NCBI RefSeq assembly: GCF_006345805.1
Contig: NC_042997.1
Span: 168,702,001 to 168,766,000, forward strand
Length of the DNA: 64,000 nucleotides
Origin: Octopus sinensis
Lineage: Eukaryota
Direction: 5' to 3'
A model generated the notes under the pieces. That model did not search any database and was not told the origin of the DNA. It was given only the letters and a program-made list of their open reading frames with translations. Within the stretch, counting starts at the first letter, position 1, and the number at the start of each line of letters is the position of its first letter. A program made the translations under genes and the position numbers. Shown piece after piece: positions 19,727-42,817 of this stretch.

Positions 19727-19933
19727 TCATGGGTTTGTTTCTGATGTAGTAAAATCCATTGACATTGCAGTGGATGTGGTCTGAGAGTTGGGATTCGCTA
19801 CTGAAGATGTCGATGTTGGAAAAATGGAAAGTGTCATTCCCTGGAGGTGACTGGTGGAGCTGTCTTCATAGGAATCGTCTATAGGTTCAGACTTAATGAA
19901 CATCATTTGATCACTTTCAAATGTGTGTGGAAT
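19727..19933 (-). CDS. Terminal coding exon: IPHTFESDQMMFIKSEPIDDSYEDSS...TTSETNP-stop (acidic, S/T-rich tail)
   Basis: Acceptor CTTTATTGCTTTTGCAG; phase 0 matches exon B2; 68 codons + TGA; IKSE fits the psi-K-x-E SUMO consensus. Linkage to the upstream exons is inferred from phase and position. Confidence 0.75.
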   Translation of the reverse strand: MPHTFESDQMMFIKSEPIDDSYEDSSTSHLQGMTLSIFPTSTSSVANPNSQTTSTAMSMDFTTSETNP

Positions 19934-20029
19934 CTGCAAAAGCAATAAAGTGAACAGGTAATTTAAAATTGGGTTAAAAAGGTATAAATAATATTATATA
20001 TCTCTCTCAATCTCTCTATATATATAGGG

Positions 20030-20190
20030 AGAGTTTACGAAAAAAACAAAAGACAAAGACAGGTGGTGTACAAAACAAACAGATGTGTTAGTATAATGCT
20101 CAGGAATAGAAAAAGTCTTTTACGTTTCGAGCCTACGCTCTTTTACAGAAAGGGACACAGAAAAAAACAAGGAAAGAAAAAAATGTGTGT
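20030..20190 (-). mobile_element. Penelope-like terminal repeat fragment
   Basis: Similar to 47275-47420 and 50605-50745; minus strand GAGCGTAGGCTC-GAAACGT resembles a decayed hammerhead stem II plus GAAA. Confidence 0.55.
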
Positions 20191-21015
20191 AGTGGCTAAC
20201 GATATATATATATATATATATATATATATATATATATATAAATAAACAATTGTAGTATGGAATAAGCCATTTAAGAAACACACAAAATATGTTAGATTCA
20301 CTTCAACATTTAAATTTAATTTGTCAAAATATTTTTGGTGCTTTGAGACCACGACCTGTTCACTGACAAAATTCCATGCTGCATCTTATATATATATATA
20401 TACACACATGCATGCACACACACGTATGCATGTATATAAATGTGAGGGAACATTACTCAATGACAGACAGTTCATAGTGTGAATGATTAACAGTTTGTCT
20501 GTATTGTTGTTATTGGCATCAATACAGTTGCTTACAGCTTGATTCACGATCAATAATAGCTGTAAAAAAGTGAAAATATAAGAGTTCATATGATGCACAT
20601 ACAAGGAAAGCCTCCCCGAATTGTGGTTGAGAAGTTGGTCTTTAGTATAAAGGAAATCAAAGATTTCAGTAAAACAGAGGTAACAAGATTGCCACTTCCA
20701 TTCGTAGGCTTTGACTTAGCCAGGATACTCAACAGGTGGCAAGAGTTTTAATTTATAAGTTGTCTGATGTATGTTGATAATGAGATCATGTTATGTCTAA
20801 CTGGGCTTCTAAATGTATATGTGAATGTCAGGTCTTAAAACAATTGGTAGTTTATCCATTATATGCTATGATAGAGTAGGAAAGACAGGCAATAACCTTT
20901 GGTTTGGCCACTTTTTGTTTCACCTTTAGAGCTATCCCTAAAATATAGGGAACATCTGTGGTCTTTCAGCTTGTTAGAAATAGCTACCAAGTCTTATTTA
21001 GGTCACAACTTAGCT

Positions 21016-21247
21016 ATTTCTTTACTACCCACAAGGGGCTAAACACAGAGAGGACAAACAAGGACAGACAAACAGATTAAGTCGATTACATCGACCCCAG
21101 TGTGTAACTGGTACTTAATTTATTGACCCCGAAAGGATGAAAGGCAAAGTCGACCTTGGCGGAATTTGAACTCAGAATGTGGCGGCAGATAAAATATCGC
21201 TAAGCATTTCGCCCGGCGTGTTATCGTTTCTGCCAGCTTGCCACCTT
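21016..21247 (-). mobile_element. SINE family C
   Basis: Colinear with 2688-2901. Confidence 0.85.
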
Positions 21248-38981: not shown

Positions 38982-39400
38982 GGCGCAGGTGTGGCTGTGG
39001 TAAGTAGCTTGCTTACCAACCACATGGTTCAGTCCCATTGCATGGCACCTTGGGCAAGTGTCTTCTACTATAGCCTCAGGCCAACCAAAGCCTTGTGAGT
39101 GGATTTGGTAGATGGAAACTGAAAGAAGCCCGTTGTATATATATATGTGTGTATATATATATATATAGAGAGATATGTATGTATGTGTGTGTACATGTTT
39201 GTGTGTCTGTGATTGTCCCCCCAACATCGCTTGACAACCGATGCTGGTGTGTATACATCCCCGTCACTTAGCAGTTCGGCAGGAGAGACCGATAGAATAA
39301 GTACTAAGCTTACAAAGAATAAGTCCTGGGGTCGATTTGCTCAACTAAAGGCAGTGCTCCAACGTGGCCGCAGTCAAATGACTGAAACAAATAAAAGAAT
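38982..39400 (+). mobile_element. SINE family A
   Basis: Full body. Confidence 0.85.
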
Positions 39401-41872
39401 ATATATATATATATATATCCTCATCATCATTTAGCATTAACTTTTCCATGCTGGTAGGGGTCAGACAGAATTTGTAAAGGCAAATTTTCTACATCTGGAT
39501 GCCCTTCCTGTCAGCAACCCTCACCTACTTCCATATATGGTAATATTTCTCCATGACCAGACATGTTTACACAGAAGAATTACATAATTGTTTCTGTGCA
39601 ATGATAAATCTACATTTAAAAGTTCTAGAAAATATGAAATTCACCACTGAATACTAAATACAACAAACACAAAGGCAAAGGATGTGGACATAGGTACAAA
39701 CACAACTTTCACCACCCTCACCACCAGTAGCAGATAAACCACCATAAAAACTACTACCTTCACTCTGACCACCACCATTACTGCTATAAGAATTACAGAA
39801 GCCACATGAGGGAGTGCTGAAAAGTTCTTGGCTTTGGGTAAAAGAAAATACAAGAGTATCAGTTAATTATGATTTTTACTCAACATATTCCCCTCTTAGA
39901 TTCACACATTTATTGCAGTGGTTCTTCAGTTTTTCTAAGCCATGTAAAAGAATTCGCAAGGTTGGGCCTCTGACCAGGCCTTTTGTGATACCTTTAAGGC
40001 CAGGAACTTTTCAACACCACCTCATATCATCATCATCATCATCATCATCGTTTAACATCTGCTCTCCATGCTAGCATGGGTTGGACGATTTTGACTGAGG
40101 GTTGACGAACCAGATGGCCGCACCAGGCTCCAATCTTGATCTGGCAGAGTTTCTGCAGCTGGATGCCAGAAAGAGGAAGGAATTGAGGCTATTGAAAGAA
40201 CATCACCAGCTAAATTACCCCACCCCCAAGAAAAAGTTCTAAGATAAAAATTGATAAGGTAACTAGCAATTTCAACAACCTGTAGCTACTATATACAAAA
40301 CATGTTTGCGCAGACAAAGAGTGACTAGGATGGACTAACATTAGACACACCCAAAACCCTGTCAAAGCTATAATATATGGGAGCCTATTCCTGTCCATAA
40401 ATCACATTGAAGTAATAAAGTTTCAACCTACAAGTATACATATGAAATGCAATACAGTGCAATGTATCAAAAATAAAAGTAGAATCCCTGAACAACAGGT
40501 GGTAATATATACGCCTGAAGTGGACACAATGCAAACAGCTTTCTGATACCATGAAACAATGAACAGATTTCAGCAACAGAGTAACAAAAGAATTTCTTAA
40601 ACTGCATTTAGAAGGTGGTGGAACAGGTGCCCTAGATACAACAGACACAAAGCCATGTACTTCAGCACACAAGGTTACTTCAACTGTTAAACCCAGGATG
40701 TTGACTCAATACACAATTTCCTTATATTAAATGAGCTATACTTTTTAAATATCTGAGGGGTTTTTCCATGACTAACTAGAGTAAATTACCTCCTGTCTAT
40801 GTCTCTACCTGAAAGATCTTGTCACATGCAAGGAGGTGATATGCAGAGAACATATAGAAACAGATCAGCTAACAAACACATCAGATGTAGAACTATACAT
40901 ATTAAAATATGTCTGCTTTTGTTTTGATAAGAAAGTAAGAAACTACATGGAGCTGCTATGTATTTGCATGAAGATGTAATACCAAAAGCGGTGTTGCCAC
41001 ACCCAAACGCTGTTTGTGACACAAAGAAAAATTTAACATGGTTATGCAAAAAAACATAACACTCAACACATTGCCCACAAGATACCTTAAACAACAACAC
41101 AAAATTTGAGAAAAGTTTTAGACAGGAGCAGCAATAACCAGTTTGAATCAACATGCCAATGAATTCATATTGAGTGGCTTTAATATTTCAAACCTCAAGT
41201 AGACAAAAGGCTATATTCTATTGAGAAAACAACAGCATGATTGCAGGTCAGCTGTTTCTGCTTAACCTCATGGGCATGATGTCCAAATATGTTACTATAT
41301 AAGAGATCCCTGATGGTCAATTAATGCAAAAATGATCCACAATATTTTGTTGTAGTTTGGGAGGGTCATTATGCCAATAATAAATACATGCACTGGTTCT
41401 GTTTCACTTCTGTGTTATTTGTCAATTGGTTAATTATATTACCATTTAACTAGATGATTTTTTGATTAATCATTTAGGGTTGTCAAAGTCCTTTTGCTAC
41501 CATTCACAATCTGATCAATGACATTCCCTCTTTACTCATGTCTGCTTCACCTGAAGTACAGAGAGCAAACCATTGCTGAGGTTGCAAATGGTAACCTAAC
41601 TGATTTACTGATTAGCTGAATGATCATAAAACAACTTATTAATAAATTGGTTAAATAGTTAATCAATTGTCAAATAAAAAATAAAGAAGTGAAATATAAC
41701 TAGTGCATGTATTTCCTATTAGCATAATGACCCTCCCAAGATACAGCAAAATATGCTTCAACCCACAATTTCACATCAAGATTCTTGCAAACCAAACACA
41801 AAAATGAAAATGATCCTCAATATGACTTGCATAATATTTATTCTCTGACTATATTGTAGTCAAATTAATATA

Positions 41873-42297
41873 GGCGTAGGAGTAGCTGTGTGGTAAGCAG
41901 CTTACTTACGAACCACATGGTTCCAGGTTCAGTCCCACTGCATGGCACCTTGGGCAAGTGTCGTCTACTATAGCCTCGGGCCAACCAAAGCCTTGTGAGT
42001 GGATTTGGTAGACGGAAACTGAAAGAAGCCCATCGTATATATATATATATATATGTTTGTGTGTGTTTGTGTGTGTGTGTGTGTGTCTGTGTTTGTCCCC
42101 CCCCCCCAACATCGCTTGACAACCGATGCTGATGTGTTTACGTCCCTGTAACTTAGCAATTTGGCAAGAGAGACCGATAGAATAAGTAGTACTAGGCTTA
42201 CAAAGAATAAGTCCTGGGGTCGATTTGCTCAACTAAAAGCGGTCCTCCAGCATGGCCACAGTCAAATGATTGAAATAAGTAAAAGAGTAAAGAGTAA
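41873..42297 (+). mobile_element. SINE family A
   Basis: Full body with (aaaagagt) tail. Confidence 0.85.
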
Positions 42298-42648
42298 TGT
42301 TTGTCCAAAGAAACTTTTGGCTCAGTACCTAACAAAAATGCACTCCAATCATTTCTAACAAATATCCACAAGGCTTAATGAAAACCAATTCAATAGAATC
42401 TTGATTCATGTATGTGACTCTAAATTCTACACACTTAAGAATGTTTCAAATACCTTTATAATTTGTATTAGGGAATAAAAAAAAACACAAAGATGCATTT
42501 AAAATTACAATAATACAAATATGTACAAGAGCAACTGTACACACACATATATGCATATATTAATATTCATAAGCTAATAAACAATAGGTATTTATATAAA
42601 TCTTAAAATACTTCTTTTTTTTTTTTCAATGTGGAACAAAAAGGATAT

Positions 42649-42817
42649 TTCTTGAACTTCCCTTTCCTCTGAGCCATACTGCTCGGAAACTCTTCTCTCA
42701 CAGCCTTGTTACATGCTGGTCCCCAATGAACCATTTCTGGAATGTTCAGCAGCATACTAATTTTCTGAAGAAGTAGGTCACGTGATACATAACCTTTAGC
42801 ACAGCCAACTAATAACT
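42649..42817 (-). CDS. Internal exon A1 of tandem RFX-like winged-helix protein: (E)LLVGCAKGYVSRDLLLQKISMLLNIPEMVHWGPACNKAVREEFPSSMAQRKGKFK(K)
   Basis: Acceptor TTCATTATTTTCAG; 169 nt open (2 nt + 55 codons + 2 nt); ends at U12 donor ATATCCTTTT; homologous to exon 29647-29473. Confidence 0.9.

What the first reader, a model, noticed from the sequence alone, without database searches (positions are those of the whole stretch)
19727..42817. Unrecognised protein with tandem RFX-like winged-helix repeats and an acidic tail
Seen: the rebuilt 241-aa C-terminus has two ~65-aa repeats whose 51-aa cores align without gaps at 25/51 identity (SRD..LQ........P....WG..CN.A.R..FPS....RKGKFK..YFGV), an acidic linker, and a tail with IKSE. 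Known: RFX/ARID2/Rsc9-type winged helices show a similar pattern (xSR..Y, helix ending R.VFP, basic wing, Y.GV/I) but usually occur once per protein. Inference: a DNA-binding regulator with two wings. I cannot match it to a named gene, so it may be an undescribed invertebrate family.
Basis: partly seen in the sequence, partly recalled or inferred. Interest (0 to 1): 0.8.

Follow-up and report, generated by a model that had tools for sequence, protein, structure and literature searches.

The report
Octopus zinc-finger gene, twin RFX-like wings
The region holds the last five exons of an uncharacterised octopus zinc-finger protein whose C-terminus has two tandem copies of an RFX-like winged-helix domain, probably DNA-binding, from a family found so far only in molluscs and a brachiopod.

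Summary
On the minus strand, five exons (42817..19727) encode 243 aa, 100% identical to residues 843-1085 of Octopus sinensis XP_029643444.1. That protein is 1085 aa, and its RefSeq name, 'probable serine/threonine-protein kinase DDB_G0282963', appears to be spurious. The two repeats share 26/52 core residues without gaps (BLASTP E 2e-18; 0 of 100,000 shuffles reach this).

AlphaFold2 on an alignment of 26 repeat units gives a confident winged helix (pLDDT 91.5). Its only strong PDB match is the RFX5 DNA-binding domain (E 9e-4, TM 0.70-0.72); the next hit is at E 0.19. Sequence-level links to RFX are marginal: Pfam RFX_DNA_binding stays below its cut-off, and hhalign gives 70% probability. I therefore call the domain RFX-like rather than an RFX family member.

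An exhaustive profile search found 61 relatives. All named ones are 'uncharacterized' proteins of molluscs or of the brachiopod Lingula. The full-length proteins carry several C2H2-like fingers followed by the two winged helices.

Each repeat is split in its wing by an AT-AC U12-type intron at the same position. This is conserved in Mytilus and explains many truncated gene models.

The most likely function is a sequence-specific DNA-binding regulator that uses two basic wings. DNA binding itself is untested. I rate it a new variant of a known kind, of moderate interest.

The parts
42649..42817 (-). Exon encoding the core of winged helix 1 (strand 1, helices 2 and 3, first wing strand: LLVGCAKGYVSRD...WGPACNKAVREEFP...RKGKFKK). 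It starts in phase 1 after ...ttttcag. Helix 1 of this repeat is in an upstream exon outside the window.
   Evidence: 100% identical to P0013 residues 843-899
33405..42648 (-). U12-type AT-AC intron (9244 nt) that splits the wing of repeat 1. The 5' splice site is AAGAA|ATATCCTTT, the branch site is TCTCCTTAAT, and the 3' end is ...GTGCTGAC|AACG. It contains SINE-like repeats.
   Evidence: The junction KKTYYFGV is confirmed by the RefSeq protein P0013 and by the transcript-derived protein P0001 of another cephalopod. The same ATATCCTTTT is present in Mytilus.
33271..33404 (-). Exon encoding the last wing strand of repeat 1 (TYYFGV), the acidic linker (QEQEELSDSENVTYQPLRDLSQD) and helix 1 of repeat 2 (LEKILQFLP).
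   Evidence: linker pI 4.05; helix assignment
29648..33270 (-). GT-AG intron in phase 1, inside the Glu codon after 'LP'. The intron that precedes the first exon in the window sits at the same position and phase.
29473..29647 (-). Exon encoding the core of winged helix 2 (ELVFWTGDFDMGISRD...WGVQCNRAMRFLFP...KRKGKFKT).
27986..29472 (-). Second U12-type AT-AC intron (1487 nt), at the same position in the wing as the first. The 5' splice site is AAGAC|ATATCCTTTC, the branch site is ATTCCTTAAC, and the 3' end is ...CTTTTCAC|TACAG.
   Evidence: junction KTTVYFGV in P0013 and P0001; Mytilus has ACATATCCTTTT at the same place
27940..27985 (-). Short exon encoding the last wing strand of repeat 2 (TTVYFGVDFMKNFTRQ).
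19934..27939 (-). GT-AG intron (8006 nt). It contains an AT-rich microsatellite block (about 22.8-23.9 kb, GC 19%) and interspersed repeats.
19727..19933 (-). Last coding exon. It encodes an acidic, Ser/Thr-rich tail with the SUMO-consensus-like motif FIKSEPIDDSYED. The stop codon TGA is at 19729..19727.
   Evidence: tail pI 4.05. Similar C-terminal motifs occur in bivalve relatives (MYIKREVESD, MYIKQEVD).

Best explanation
Window 19727-42817 (minus strand) carries the last five coding exons of a single-copy host gene. This is Octopus sinensis XP_029643444.1, 1085 aa.

The protein belongs to an uncharacterised lophotrochozoan family. Members have several C2H2-like zinc fingers, a basic KRKR-type stretch, and a conserved C-terminal module. 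The module consists of one finger followed by two tandem winged-helix domains of about 80 aa each. These domains are most similar to the RFX DNA-binding domain.

Shown here:
- the exons and the repeat;
- the winged-helix fold prediction;
- RFX5 as the closest solved structure;
- the taxonomic range;
- that the module is the best-conserved part of the protein;
- that the invariant residues cluster in helix 3 (C-N-x-A-x-R) and in the basic beta-hairpin wing (R-K-G-K-x-K-x-T).

Inferred: the protein is a nuclear, sequence-specific DNA-binding regulator. Each wing and helix 3 would contact DNA as in RFX1, where the wing reads the major groove. The two domains in one chain would act as a built-in pseudo-dimer on a bipartite site, much as the two domains of E2F7/8 replace an E2F-DP dimer. 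The acidic linker and the acidic, SUMO-motif-bearing tail would be regulatory.

The repeat arose by tandem duplication of a two-exon unit. That unit already contained a phase-1 GT-AG intron and an AT-AC U12 intron, because both intron positions are the same in the two repeats.
For: - Gene model and identity.
- Repeat significance.
- Fold of the whole module: helix-strand-helix-helix-strand-strand twice, pLDDT 71.
- Fold of the single repeat: pLDDT 91.5, pTM 0.81.
- Foldseek against PDB: RFX5 DNA-binding domain (8zjr_M) is first for both models. For the repeat, E 9.4e-4, probability 1.00, TM 0.70/0.72, rmsd 3.1 over 79 columns; the next hit is E 0.19.
- Foldseek against viral structures: winged helices of D5-type DNA primases, E 5e-4 to 1e-2.
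- Sequence hints of RFX: hhalign of the repeat profile against RFX domains gives probability 70.5%, P 3.9e-5 over 58 columns, aligning helix 3 and the wing. Pfam RFX_DNA_binding scores below its cut-off in P0020 (E 0.14) and in 2 of 26 units (best E 0.0047).
- Conservation: invariant R24, L28, C47, N48, A50, R52, R62, G64, K67; nearly invariant W43, F55, P56, K63, K65, T69, G73.
- The module is 63-65% identical between Octopus and Haliotis or scallop, against 37% for the N-terminal finger region.
- Both repeats are basic (pI 9.3); the linker and tail are acidic (pI 4.05).
- Family and range: 61 hits, full-length proteins of 724-1480 aa, from molluscs plus Lingula.
- RFX1 binding mode (wing in the major groove, binds as a dimer): PMC4333399.
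- U12 introns: plus read-through tails 'K-Y-P-F/L' in dozens of truncated gene models.
Against: - No experiment shows DNA binding.
- No Pfam family reaches its cut-off on the window protein or on the full-length relatives.
- PDB sequence searches, single-sequence and profile, find nothing meaningful.
- One repeat unit gave a weak Linker_histone hit (E 0.0014), so the sequence signal is not exclusive to RFX.
- The RFX1 crystal structure 1dp7 is not among the top 50 Foldseek hits.
- The wing is two residues shorter than in RFX, and the 'FGK' start of RFX helix 3 is replaced by 'WG-x-x-CN-R/K-A'.
- The relative orientation of the two domains is not predicted with confidence (pTM 0.41), so the pseudo-dimer idea is conjecture.
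Confidence: 0.65

Rival explanations
1. The two winged helices are real but do not read double-stranded DNA. They would serve as protein-protein or RNA-binding modules, as in cullins, ESCRT-II, MukE/ScpB kleisin partners or the Roquin ROQ domain. Any DNA contact would come from the zinc fingers.
For: The lower-ranked Foldseek hits include many non-DNA-binding tandem winged helices: CUL5, ESCRT-II, MukE, Nse1/3, Roquin and UFL1. No DNA-binding assay exists. The sequence link to RFX is sub-threshold.
Against: Those hits have E of 0.08 or worse, low TM scores and very high rmsd for the module. RFX5 is the single clear match. Both repeats are basic (pI 9.3). The invariant residues are Lys/Arg of the wing and helix 3, which are the DNA-contacting elements of RFX1 (PMC4333399). 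The viral matches are winged helices of DNA primases.
Confidence: 0.2
2. The domain is an independent winged-helix lineage that merely resembles RFX (convergence, or very deep common ancestry within the superfamily). It would not be an offshoot of the metazoan RFX family, so RFX-type wing-first DNA recognition cannot be assumed.
For: The Pfam RFX model never reaches its 27-bit cut-off. Identity to RFX5 is 14-15%. There are no RFX accessory domains. One unit gives a weak linker-histone hit. 1dp7 is absent from the top hits. D5-primase winged helices match about as well as RFX5.
Against: RFX is the only family that recurs across three independent methods: Foldseek rank 1 twice, Pfam weak hits in 3 sequences, and hhalign at 70% with co-linear alignment of S1, H3, FP and the wing ending Y-x-G-[VI].
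Confidence: 0.3
3. The module is a domesticated or still-mobile transposon or virus protein, for example the winged helix of a D5-like primase-helicase, rather than an old host transcription factor.
For: BFVD hits to giant-virus and phage primases. The introns are full of mobile-element debris. A distant single-domain relative sits on an anonymous marine metagenome contig.
Against: Full-length relatives have no transposase, primase, helicase or RT domain. The window holds one copy only. Orthologues with the same architecture occur in cephalopods, gastropods, bivalves and a brachiopod. Intron positions, including the rare AT-AC introns, are shared between Octopus and Mytilus. The metagenome contig has C2H2-like ORFs upstream, like the host family.
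Confidence: 0.05

Closest known systems
RFX DNA-binding domain (Pfam PF02257; RFX1-8, DAF-19; solved structures 1DP7 RFX1 and 8ZJR RFX5)
   Same: It has the same H1-S1-H2-H3-S2-wing-S3 fold over the whole roughly 76-80 aa. RFX5 is the top structural match (TM 0.70-0.72). Shared sequence landmarks are R-x-x-F-P at the end of helix 3, a basic [KR]-R-x-G start of the wing, and Y-x-G-[VI] at the end of the wing.
   Different: It stays below the Pfam cut-off and is about 15% identical. The wing is two residues shorter. The family-specific 'WG-x-x-CN-[KR]-A' replaces 'FGK'. There are two copies per chain rather than one. It has no RFX dimerisation or B/C domains, and it is combined with C2H2-like fingers.
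E2F7/E2F8 (atypical E2Fs with two tandem winged-helix DNA-binding domains)
   Same: Two winged-helix DNA-binding domains sit in one polypeptide. In E2F7/8 they substitute for a dimer (established knowledge, not tested here). This is the proposed working analogy.
   Different: There is no sequence or specific structural similarity to the E2F_TDP domain: no Pfam hit, and E2F is not among the Foldseek hits. The analogy is architectural only.
Winged helices at the C-terminus of D5-type / phage primase-helicases
   Same: Fold-level matches with E 5e-4 to 1e-2 and TMq 0.6-0.7. AsfvPrimPol also appears in the PDB list.
   Different: Those domains are appended to primase-helicase enzymes. No such enzymatic domains occur here, and identity is 10-19%.
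Multi-C2H2 zinc-finger transcription factors with an extra DNA-binding domain (general class)
   Same: The full-length protein P0013 has four C-x2-C...H-x3-5-H motifs, poly-Q/Ser-rich low-complexity regions, a basic KRKR stretch and psi-K-x-E motifs (sequence, read by eye).
   Different: The fingers are isolated and atypical, with only sub-threshold Pfam hits such as zf-met, ZNF451_C and KIN17. The best-conserved part is the winged-helix module, not the fingers.

Membership tests
RFX transcription factors (RFX_DNA_binding, PF02257) | Match to the Pfam RFX_DNA_binding model at or above its gathering cut-off (27 bits) | tested here: not met
   No hit for the window protein at E up to 10. The clam-group relative P0020 scores 13.2 bits, E 0.14. 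Only 2 of 26 repeat units hit, best E 0.0047.
RFX transcription factors (RFX_DNA_binding, PF02257) | Winged-helix fold with a long beta-hairpin wing that superposes on a solved RFX DNA-binding domain | tested here: met
   AF2 pLDDT 91.5. Foldseek rank 1 is RFX5 8zjr_M, E 9.4e-4, TM 0.70/0.72, rmsd 3.1 A over 79 columns. RFX5 is also rank 1 for the two-repeat model. Caveat: 1dp7 (RFX1) is not in the top 50.
RFX transcription factors (RFX_DNA_binding, PF02257) | Helix 3-wing signature FGK-IR--FP----RRLG-RG-SKY-Y-GI | tested here: inconclusive
   hhalign gives probability 70.5%, P 3.9e-5, aligning R--FP, [KR]R-G and Y-G[VI]. However, FGK is absent and the wing is 2 aa shorter.
RFX transcription factors (RFX_DNA_binding, PF02257) | RFX accessory regions (dimerisation domain, B/C regions, activation domain) | tested here: not met
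   No such Pfam families in six full-length relatives, including the octopus protein.
RFX transcription factors (RFX_DNA_binding, PF02257) | Binding of X-box DNA, with the wing in the major groove | not testable with these tools
   Requires EMSA, SELEX or a co-structure. The RFX1 binding mode is taken from PMC4333399.
Winged-helix superfamily (fold level) | H1-S1-H2-H3-S2-W1-S3 topology | tested here: met
   DSSP of both models. Nearly all Foldseek hits are winged-helix domains.
Winged-helix superfamily (fold level) | Basic, conserved helix 3 / wing surface, as expected for nucleic-acid binding | tested here: met
   Both repeats have pI 9.3. The invariant or near-invariant residues are N48, R52, R62, K63, G64, K65, K67.
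U12-type (minor spliceosome) AT-AC introns | 5' splice site /ATATCCTT | tested here: met
   AAGAA|ATATCCTTT at 42648 and AAGAC|ATATCCTTTC at 29472. The same motif is present in Mytilus edulis.
U12-type (minor spliceosome) AT-AC introns | Branch site TCCTTAAC close to the 3' end, and a terminal AC | tested here: met
   TCTCCTTAAT and TTCCTTAAC are each followed by 8 nt ending in AC. The resulting junctions equal the RefSeq protein and the transcript-derived protein P0001.
U12-type (minor spliceosome) AT-AC introns | Removal by the U12-dependent spliceosome | not testable with these tools
   Would need minor-spliceosome knock-down, or RNA-seq of the octopus itself.
C2H2 zinc-finger proteins | C-x2-4-C-x12-H-x3-5-H fingers recognised by a zf-C2H2-type model | tested here: inconclusive
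   No such motif lies inside the window's gene part. The full-length protein P0013 shows four such motifs by eye. Pfam gives only sub-threshold hits in relatives (zf-met 15.2 bits, ZNF451_C, KIN17). UniProt labels several relatives 'C2H2-type domain-containing'.
Transposable-element or viral protein | Transposase, RT, primase or helicase domains; many copies; no conserved host gene structure | tested here: not met
   No such domains. One copy in the window. Same architecture in cephalopods, gastropods, bivalves and a brachiopod. Intron positions shared with Mytilus.

The most novel reading that the evidence does not exclude
A transcription-factor family specific to lophotrochozoans, in which an RFX-derived winged helix was duplicated in tandem and fused to zinc fingers. 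A single chain would then read a bipartite, X-box-like site with two wings, acting as an intramolecular RFX 'dimer'. The duplication also copied a rare AT-AC U12 intron, so production of either wing would depend on the minor spliceosome.
Probability: 0.3. Interest if true: 0.6.

Novelty: new variant of a known kind. Interest (0 to 1): 0.45.

Why it matters
If this is correct, it adds a DNA-binding domain family to the lophotrochozoan transcription-factor repertoire. That family is currently invisible to Pfam-based transcription-factor catalogues for octopus, oysters, scallops, snails and brachiopods.

It would also be a second example, after E2F7/8, of a winged-helix factor that builds its dimer into one chain.

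The paired AT-AC introns give a clean case of a U12 intron propagated by exon duplication. They also have a practical consequence. Gene predictors that force GT-AG splicing either truncate these genes (read-through tails '...KGKFK-K/T-YPF') or skip the wing altogether (for example UniProt A0A0L8I311, and the Mytilus edulis model P0003). The RefSeq name 'probable serine/threonine-protein kinase' also looks wrong: no kinase domain was found, and the name probably stems from low-complexity similarity.

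Tried and rejected
- Pfam on the four raw exon ORFs and on the spliced 240 aa gave no family even at E 10.
- PDB sequence searches with the protein and with the 26-unit profile gave only chance-level hits: histidyl-tRNA synthetase and CCT gamma, E 0.4-1.4.
- My first splice model used the downstream AC at both AT-AC introns and was one codon short at each. I corrected it after seeing P0001 and P0013.
- I looked for the N-terminal exons and the zinc finger in the rest of the window by tblastn and by regular expression. 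They are absent, so the gene continues beyond position 64000.
- A word-indexed homologue search with the N-terminal finger region, aimed at finding a named orthologue in other phyla, returned only six unnamed or mollusc fragments.
- Literature searches for the family, the RefSeq name, or tandem RFX domains in molluscs found nothing relevant.
- Pfam on intronic ORFs that looked to me like Penelope-type (GIY-YIG) and PIF1/Helitron remnants gave no hits at E 0.01, so those labels remain my reading only.
It was fixed in A4.
- A TE or viral origin and a chance repeat were considered and rejected (see the rival explanations).

Full report
**What is in the sequence.** The window has low GC content and is full of microsatellites and interspersed repeats, as expected for animal DNA. 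On the minus strand, five open segments join into one reading frame:
- 42817..42649
- 33404..33271
- 29647..29473
- 27985..27940
- 19933..19727, with the stop codon TGA at 19729..19727

The 243 encoded residues are 100% identical to residues 843-1085 of P0013. P0013 is XP_029643444.1 of Octopus sinensis, 1085 aa. It is labelled 'probable serine/threonine-protein kinase DDB_G0282963 isoform X1'. Pfam finds no kinase domain in it. Its O. bimaculoides counterpart is named after another Dictyostelium low-complexity protein, so the name appears spurious. The finding's coordinates are exactly the outer limits of these five exons. The first 842 residues, including four C2H2-like fingers, are not in the window.

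**Checking the observation.** The two repeats align without gaps at 27/62 identity, with a pairwise E of 2e-18. None of 100,000 shuffles exceeded 13 matches. The acidic linker (pI 4.05), the acidic tail (pI 4.05) and the FIKSEP motif are present.
- The structural unit is about 80 aa, and helix 1 of repeat 1 lies in an exon upstream of the window.
- The piece is the C-terminus of a much larger protein.

**Gene structure.** The intron inside each wing is not GT-AG. Both begin with ATATCCTTT directly after AAG AA / AAG AC. Both have a TCCTTAA(C/T) branch site, and both end in AC eight nucleotides later. This is the textbook signature of AT-AC U12-type introns.

The junctions they create (KKTYYFGV, KTTVYFGV) are those of the RefSeq protein. 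They are also those of P0001, a 345-aa protein read from a 1.3-kb contig of another cephalopod, which must be a spliced transcript. The RefSeq X2 isoforms use an AC three bases downstream at the first junction, giving KKYYFGV.

The GT-AG intron upstream of each repeat core is also in the same place and phase in both repeats: phase 1, in the Glu codon after 'LP'. So the duplicated unit was a two-exon genomic segment that already carried both introns.

In Mytilus edulis genomic DNA, ATATCCTTTT follows KGKYK in both repeats, and TTTCCTTAAC precedes the first wing exon. In addition, dozens of truncated database proteins end in '...KGK[FY]K-[KTA]-YP[FL]', which is the translation of a read-through ATATCCTT. 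The U12 introns are therefore old. They also explain many poor gene models, including UniProt A0A0L8I311 and the Mytilus model, which skip the wing.

**Relatives.** Word-indexed searches found only mollusc proteins. An exhaustive HMMER profile search of 1.84 billion representatives found 61 proteins, 50 of them below 1e-10.

Every named relative is 'uncharacterized', 'hypothetical' or 'C2H2-type domain-containing'. They come from:
- cephalopods (Octopus);
- gastropods (Haliotis, Gigantopelta, Pomacea, Nucella, Littorina, Lottia);
- bivalves (Pecten, Mizuhopecten, Mytilus, Solemya, Mya, Pinctada, Sinanodonta);
- the brachiopod Lingula anatina.

Full-length members are 724-1480 aa and share one architecture:
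- two N-terminal fingers;
- a 'FG[KR]YTKL[IV]REGGNIVYFCQVCNWKC' finger;
- a KRKR stretch;
- a fourth finger;
- the two repeats.

The finger-plus-repeats module is the best-conserved part. It is 63-65% identical between Octopus and Haliotis or scallop, against 37% for the N-terminal finger region. A search with the N-terminal region found no named orthologue elsewhere.

The most distant hit is P0061 (E 5e-8). It has a single domain with a more RFX-like wing (RRGRNKAYYYHGI). It lies uninterrupted on Tara Oceans metagenome contigs, downstream of ORFs with C2H2-like motifs.

**Fold.** AlphaFold2 on the whole module with 8 sequences gave pLDDT 71, and each repeat adopted helix-strand-helix-helix-strand-strand. 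On an alignment of 26 repeat units it gave pLDDT 91.5 and pTM 0.81, with H1, S1, H2, H3 and a beta-hairpin wing.

Foldseek against the PDB puts the RFX5 DNA-binding domain (8zjr_M) first for both models. For the repeat, E is 9.4e-4, probability 1.00, TM 0.70/0.72 and rmsd 3.1 A over 79 columns. The next hit is at E 0.19, followed by ETS, AsfvPrimPol, PerR/Fur, Roquin, Cdt1 and FOX winged helices. Against viral predicted structures, the matches are the winged helices of D5-type and phage DNA primases (E 5e-4 to 1e-2).

**Is it an RFX domain?** At sequence level the evidence is marginal but always points the same way:
- Pfam RFX_DNA_binding hits P0020 at E 0.14 on the helix 3-wing segment.
- It hits 2 of 26 repeat units, best E 0.0047. 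All of these are far below the 27-bit cut-off.
- hhalign of the repeat profile against six RFX domains gives 70.5% probability and P 3.9e-5 over 58 columns.
- That alignment lines up the S/P-R at the start of H2, R-x-x-F-P at the end of H3, [KR]-R-x-G at the start of the wing and Y-x-G-[VI] at its end.

Against membership:
- The wing is two residues shorter.
- The 'FGK' of RFX is replaced by the family-specific 'WG-x-x-C-N-[KR]-A'.
- There are no RFX accessory domains.
- One unit weakly hits Linker_histone.
- 1dp7 is not in the Foldseek top 50.

I therefore describe it as RFX-like, with RFX its closest known fold, and I do not file it as an RFX family member.

**How it probably works.** The columns that never vary across 26 units are R24, L28, C47, N48, A50, R52, R62, G64 and K67. 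Nearly invariant are W43, F55, P56, K63, K65, T69 and G73. These residues are the N-terminal half of helix 3 and the basic hairpin R-K-G-K-x-K-x-T.

In RFX1 the wing reads the major groove, helix 3 touches the minor groove, and two domains bind the two half-sites of the X-box (PMC4333399). Both repeats are basic (pI 9.3), and they are separated by an acidic linker of about 30 residues.

The best-supported reading is a nuclear, sequence-specific DNA-binding regulator. In it, two covalently linked RFX-like domains, possibly together with the adjacent finger, would recognise a bipartite site. This is analogous to the two domains of E2F7/8 (my knowledge; architecture only).

The psi-K-x-E motifs followed by acidic residues look like SUMO-regulated transcription-factor motifs, which is an inference. 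They are IKTEPED before finger 4 and FIKSEPIDDSYED in the tail, and bivalves have MYIK[RQ]EV[DE]SD at the C-terminus.

What is shown: the exons, the repeat, the fold prediction, the structural neighbour, the conservation pattern and the taxonomic range. What is inferred: DNA binding, the wing-first binding mode, pseudo-dimer behaviour and SUMO control. The relative placement of the two domains is not predicted reliably (pTM 0.41).

**Rival explanations.**
- The winged helices may be protein- or RNA-binding modules. This is possible, but the non-DNA-binding winged-helix hits are weak, and the conserved basic wing argues for nucleic acid.
- The domain may be an independent winged-helix lineage that only resembles RFX. 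This stays open, and it matters for how far RFX mechanisms can be transferred.
- A TE or viral origin is unlikely. There are no enzymatic domains. The window holds one copy only. The architecture is conserved across two phyla, and rare intron positions are shared.

**Novelty and score.** The gene is already modelled in RefSeq, but it is unnamed and partly mis-named. The domain has no Pfam model, and no paper in the searchable library mentions it. It is a new variant of a known kind: a divergent, tandemly duplicated RFX-like winged helix fused to zinc fingers, restricted so far to lophotrochozoans, and carrying duplicated AT-AC introns. This would be useful to people cataloguing spiralian transcription factors and to people studying minor-intron evolution, but it overturns nothing.

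Noticed in passing
window 42648..33405 and 29472..27986 (minus strand): Two AT-AC U12-type introns (ATATCCTTT ... TCCTTAA[CT] ... AC) sit at the same codon position in the wing of each repeat. Read-through of this donor explains many truncated database proteins that end in ...KGKFK-K/T-YPF/L.
   Followed up: yes
window 33404/33401 (3' end of the first AT-AC intron): Two AC dinucleotides lie 3 nt apart. RefSeq isoform X1 (KKTYYFGV) uses the upstream one and isoform X2 (KKYYFGV; P0071, P0076) uses the downstream one. This may be an alternative 3' splice site of a U12 intron.
   Followed up: partly
whole gene (protein P0013 = XP_029643444.1): The RefSeq product name 'probable serine/threonine-protein kinase DDB_G0282963' is unsupported, because Pfam finds no kinase domain. 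The name probably comes from low-complexity (poly-Q/N/S) similarity to a Dictyostelium protein.
   Followed up: partly
about 20 places in the window, e.g. 1-307, 13646-14058, 18402-18825, 25620-25900, 36479-36875, 38977-39401, 41860-42380, 51943-52342, 53386-53791, 62150-62908: A roughly 430-bp interspersed repeat occurs in both orientations, with copies 72-93% identical to one another. It is probably a SINE, and its pseudo-translation (...IHSQGFGWPEAIVEDTCPRCHAVGLNPEPCG...) clutters the ORF lists.
   Followed up: partly
window about 22,800-23,900: A block of AT-only microsatellite (GC 19% in the 22-24 kb bin) lies inside the last intron. It reads as long poly-I/Y/L/N 'ORFs'.
   Followed up: no
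window about 47,400-49,200 (minus strand); GC skew +0.31 over 46-50 kb: Long stop-free minus-strand frames include a GIY-YIG-like motif (VVYCISCSFCPSLYIGQTG) downstream of an RT-like stretch. This looks to me like a Penelope-like retroelement, in a strongly strand-skewed, low-complexity region. Pfam gave no hit at E 0.01.
   Followed up: partly
window about 30,180-31,250 (plus strand), inside the GT-AG intron 33270..29648: Broken plus-strand ORFs contain motifs reminiscent of the C-terminus of PIF1/Helitron helicases (...NKAQGQSLKVVGLNL...FSHSQLYV...). Pfam gave no hit at E 0.01, so this is my reading only.
   Followed up: partly
L001 3001-3732 (Tara Oceans metagenome scaffold; also L002, L003): The most distant relative, P0061, has one uninterrupted winged-helix domain with a more RFX-like wing (KRRGRNKAYYYHGI). 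It lies downstream of ORFs with C2H2-like motifs (L001 524-1141). The organism is unknown. It could bridge this family to RFX, or mark its presence in a planktonic animal.
   Followed up: partly
L004 about 4708-5260 (Mytilus edulis CAJPWZ010000169.1): In Mytilus repeat 1 the reading frame seems to need either a donor one base off the ATATCC motif or an intron that ends in AA rather than AC. I did not resolve which. The deposited Mytilus gene model skips the wing at both repeats.
   Followed up: no
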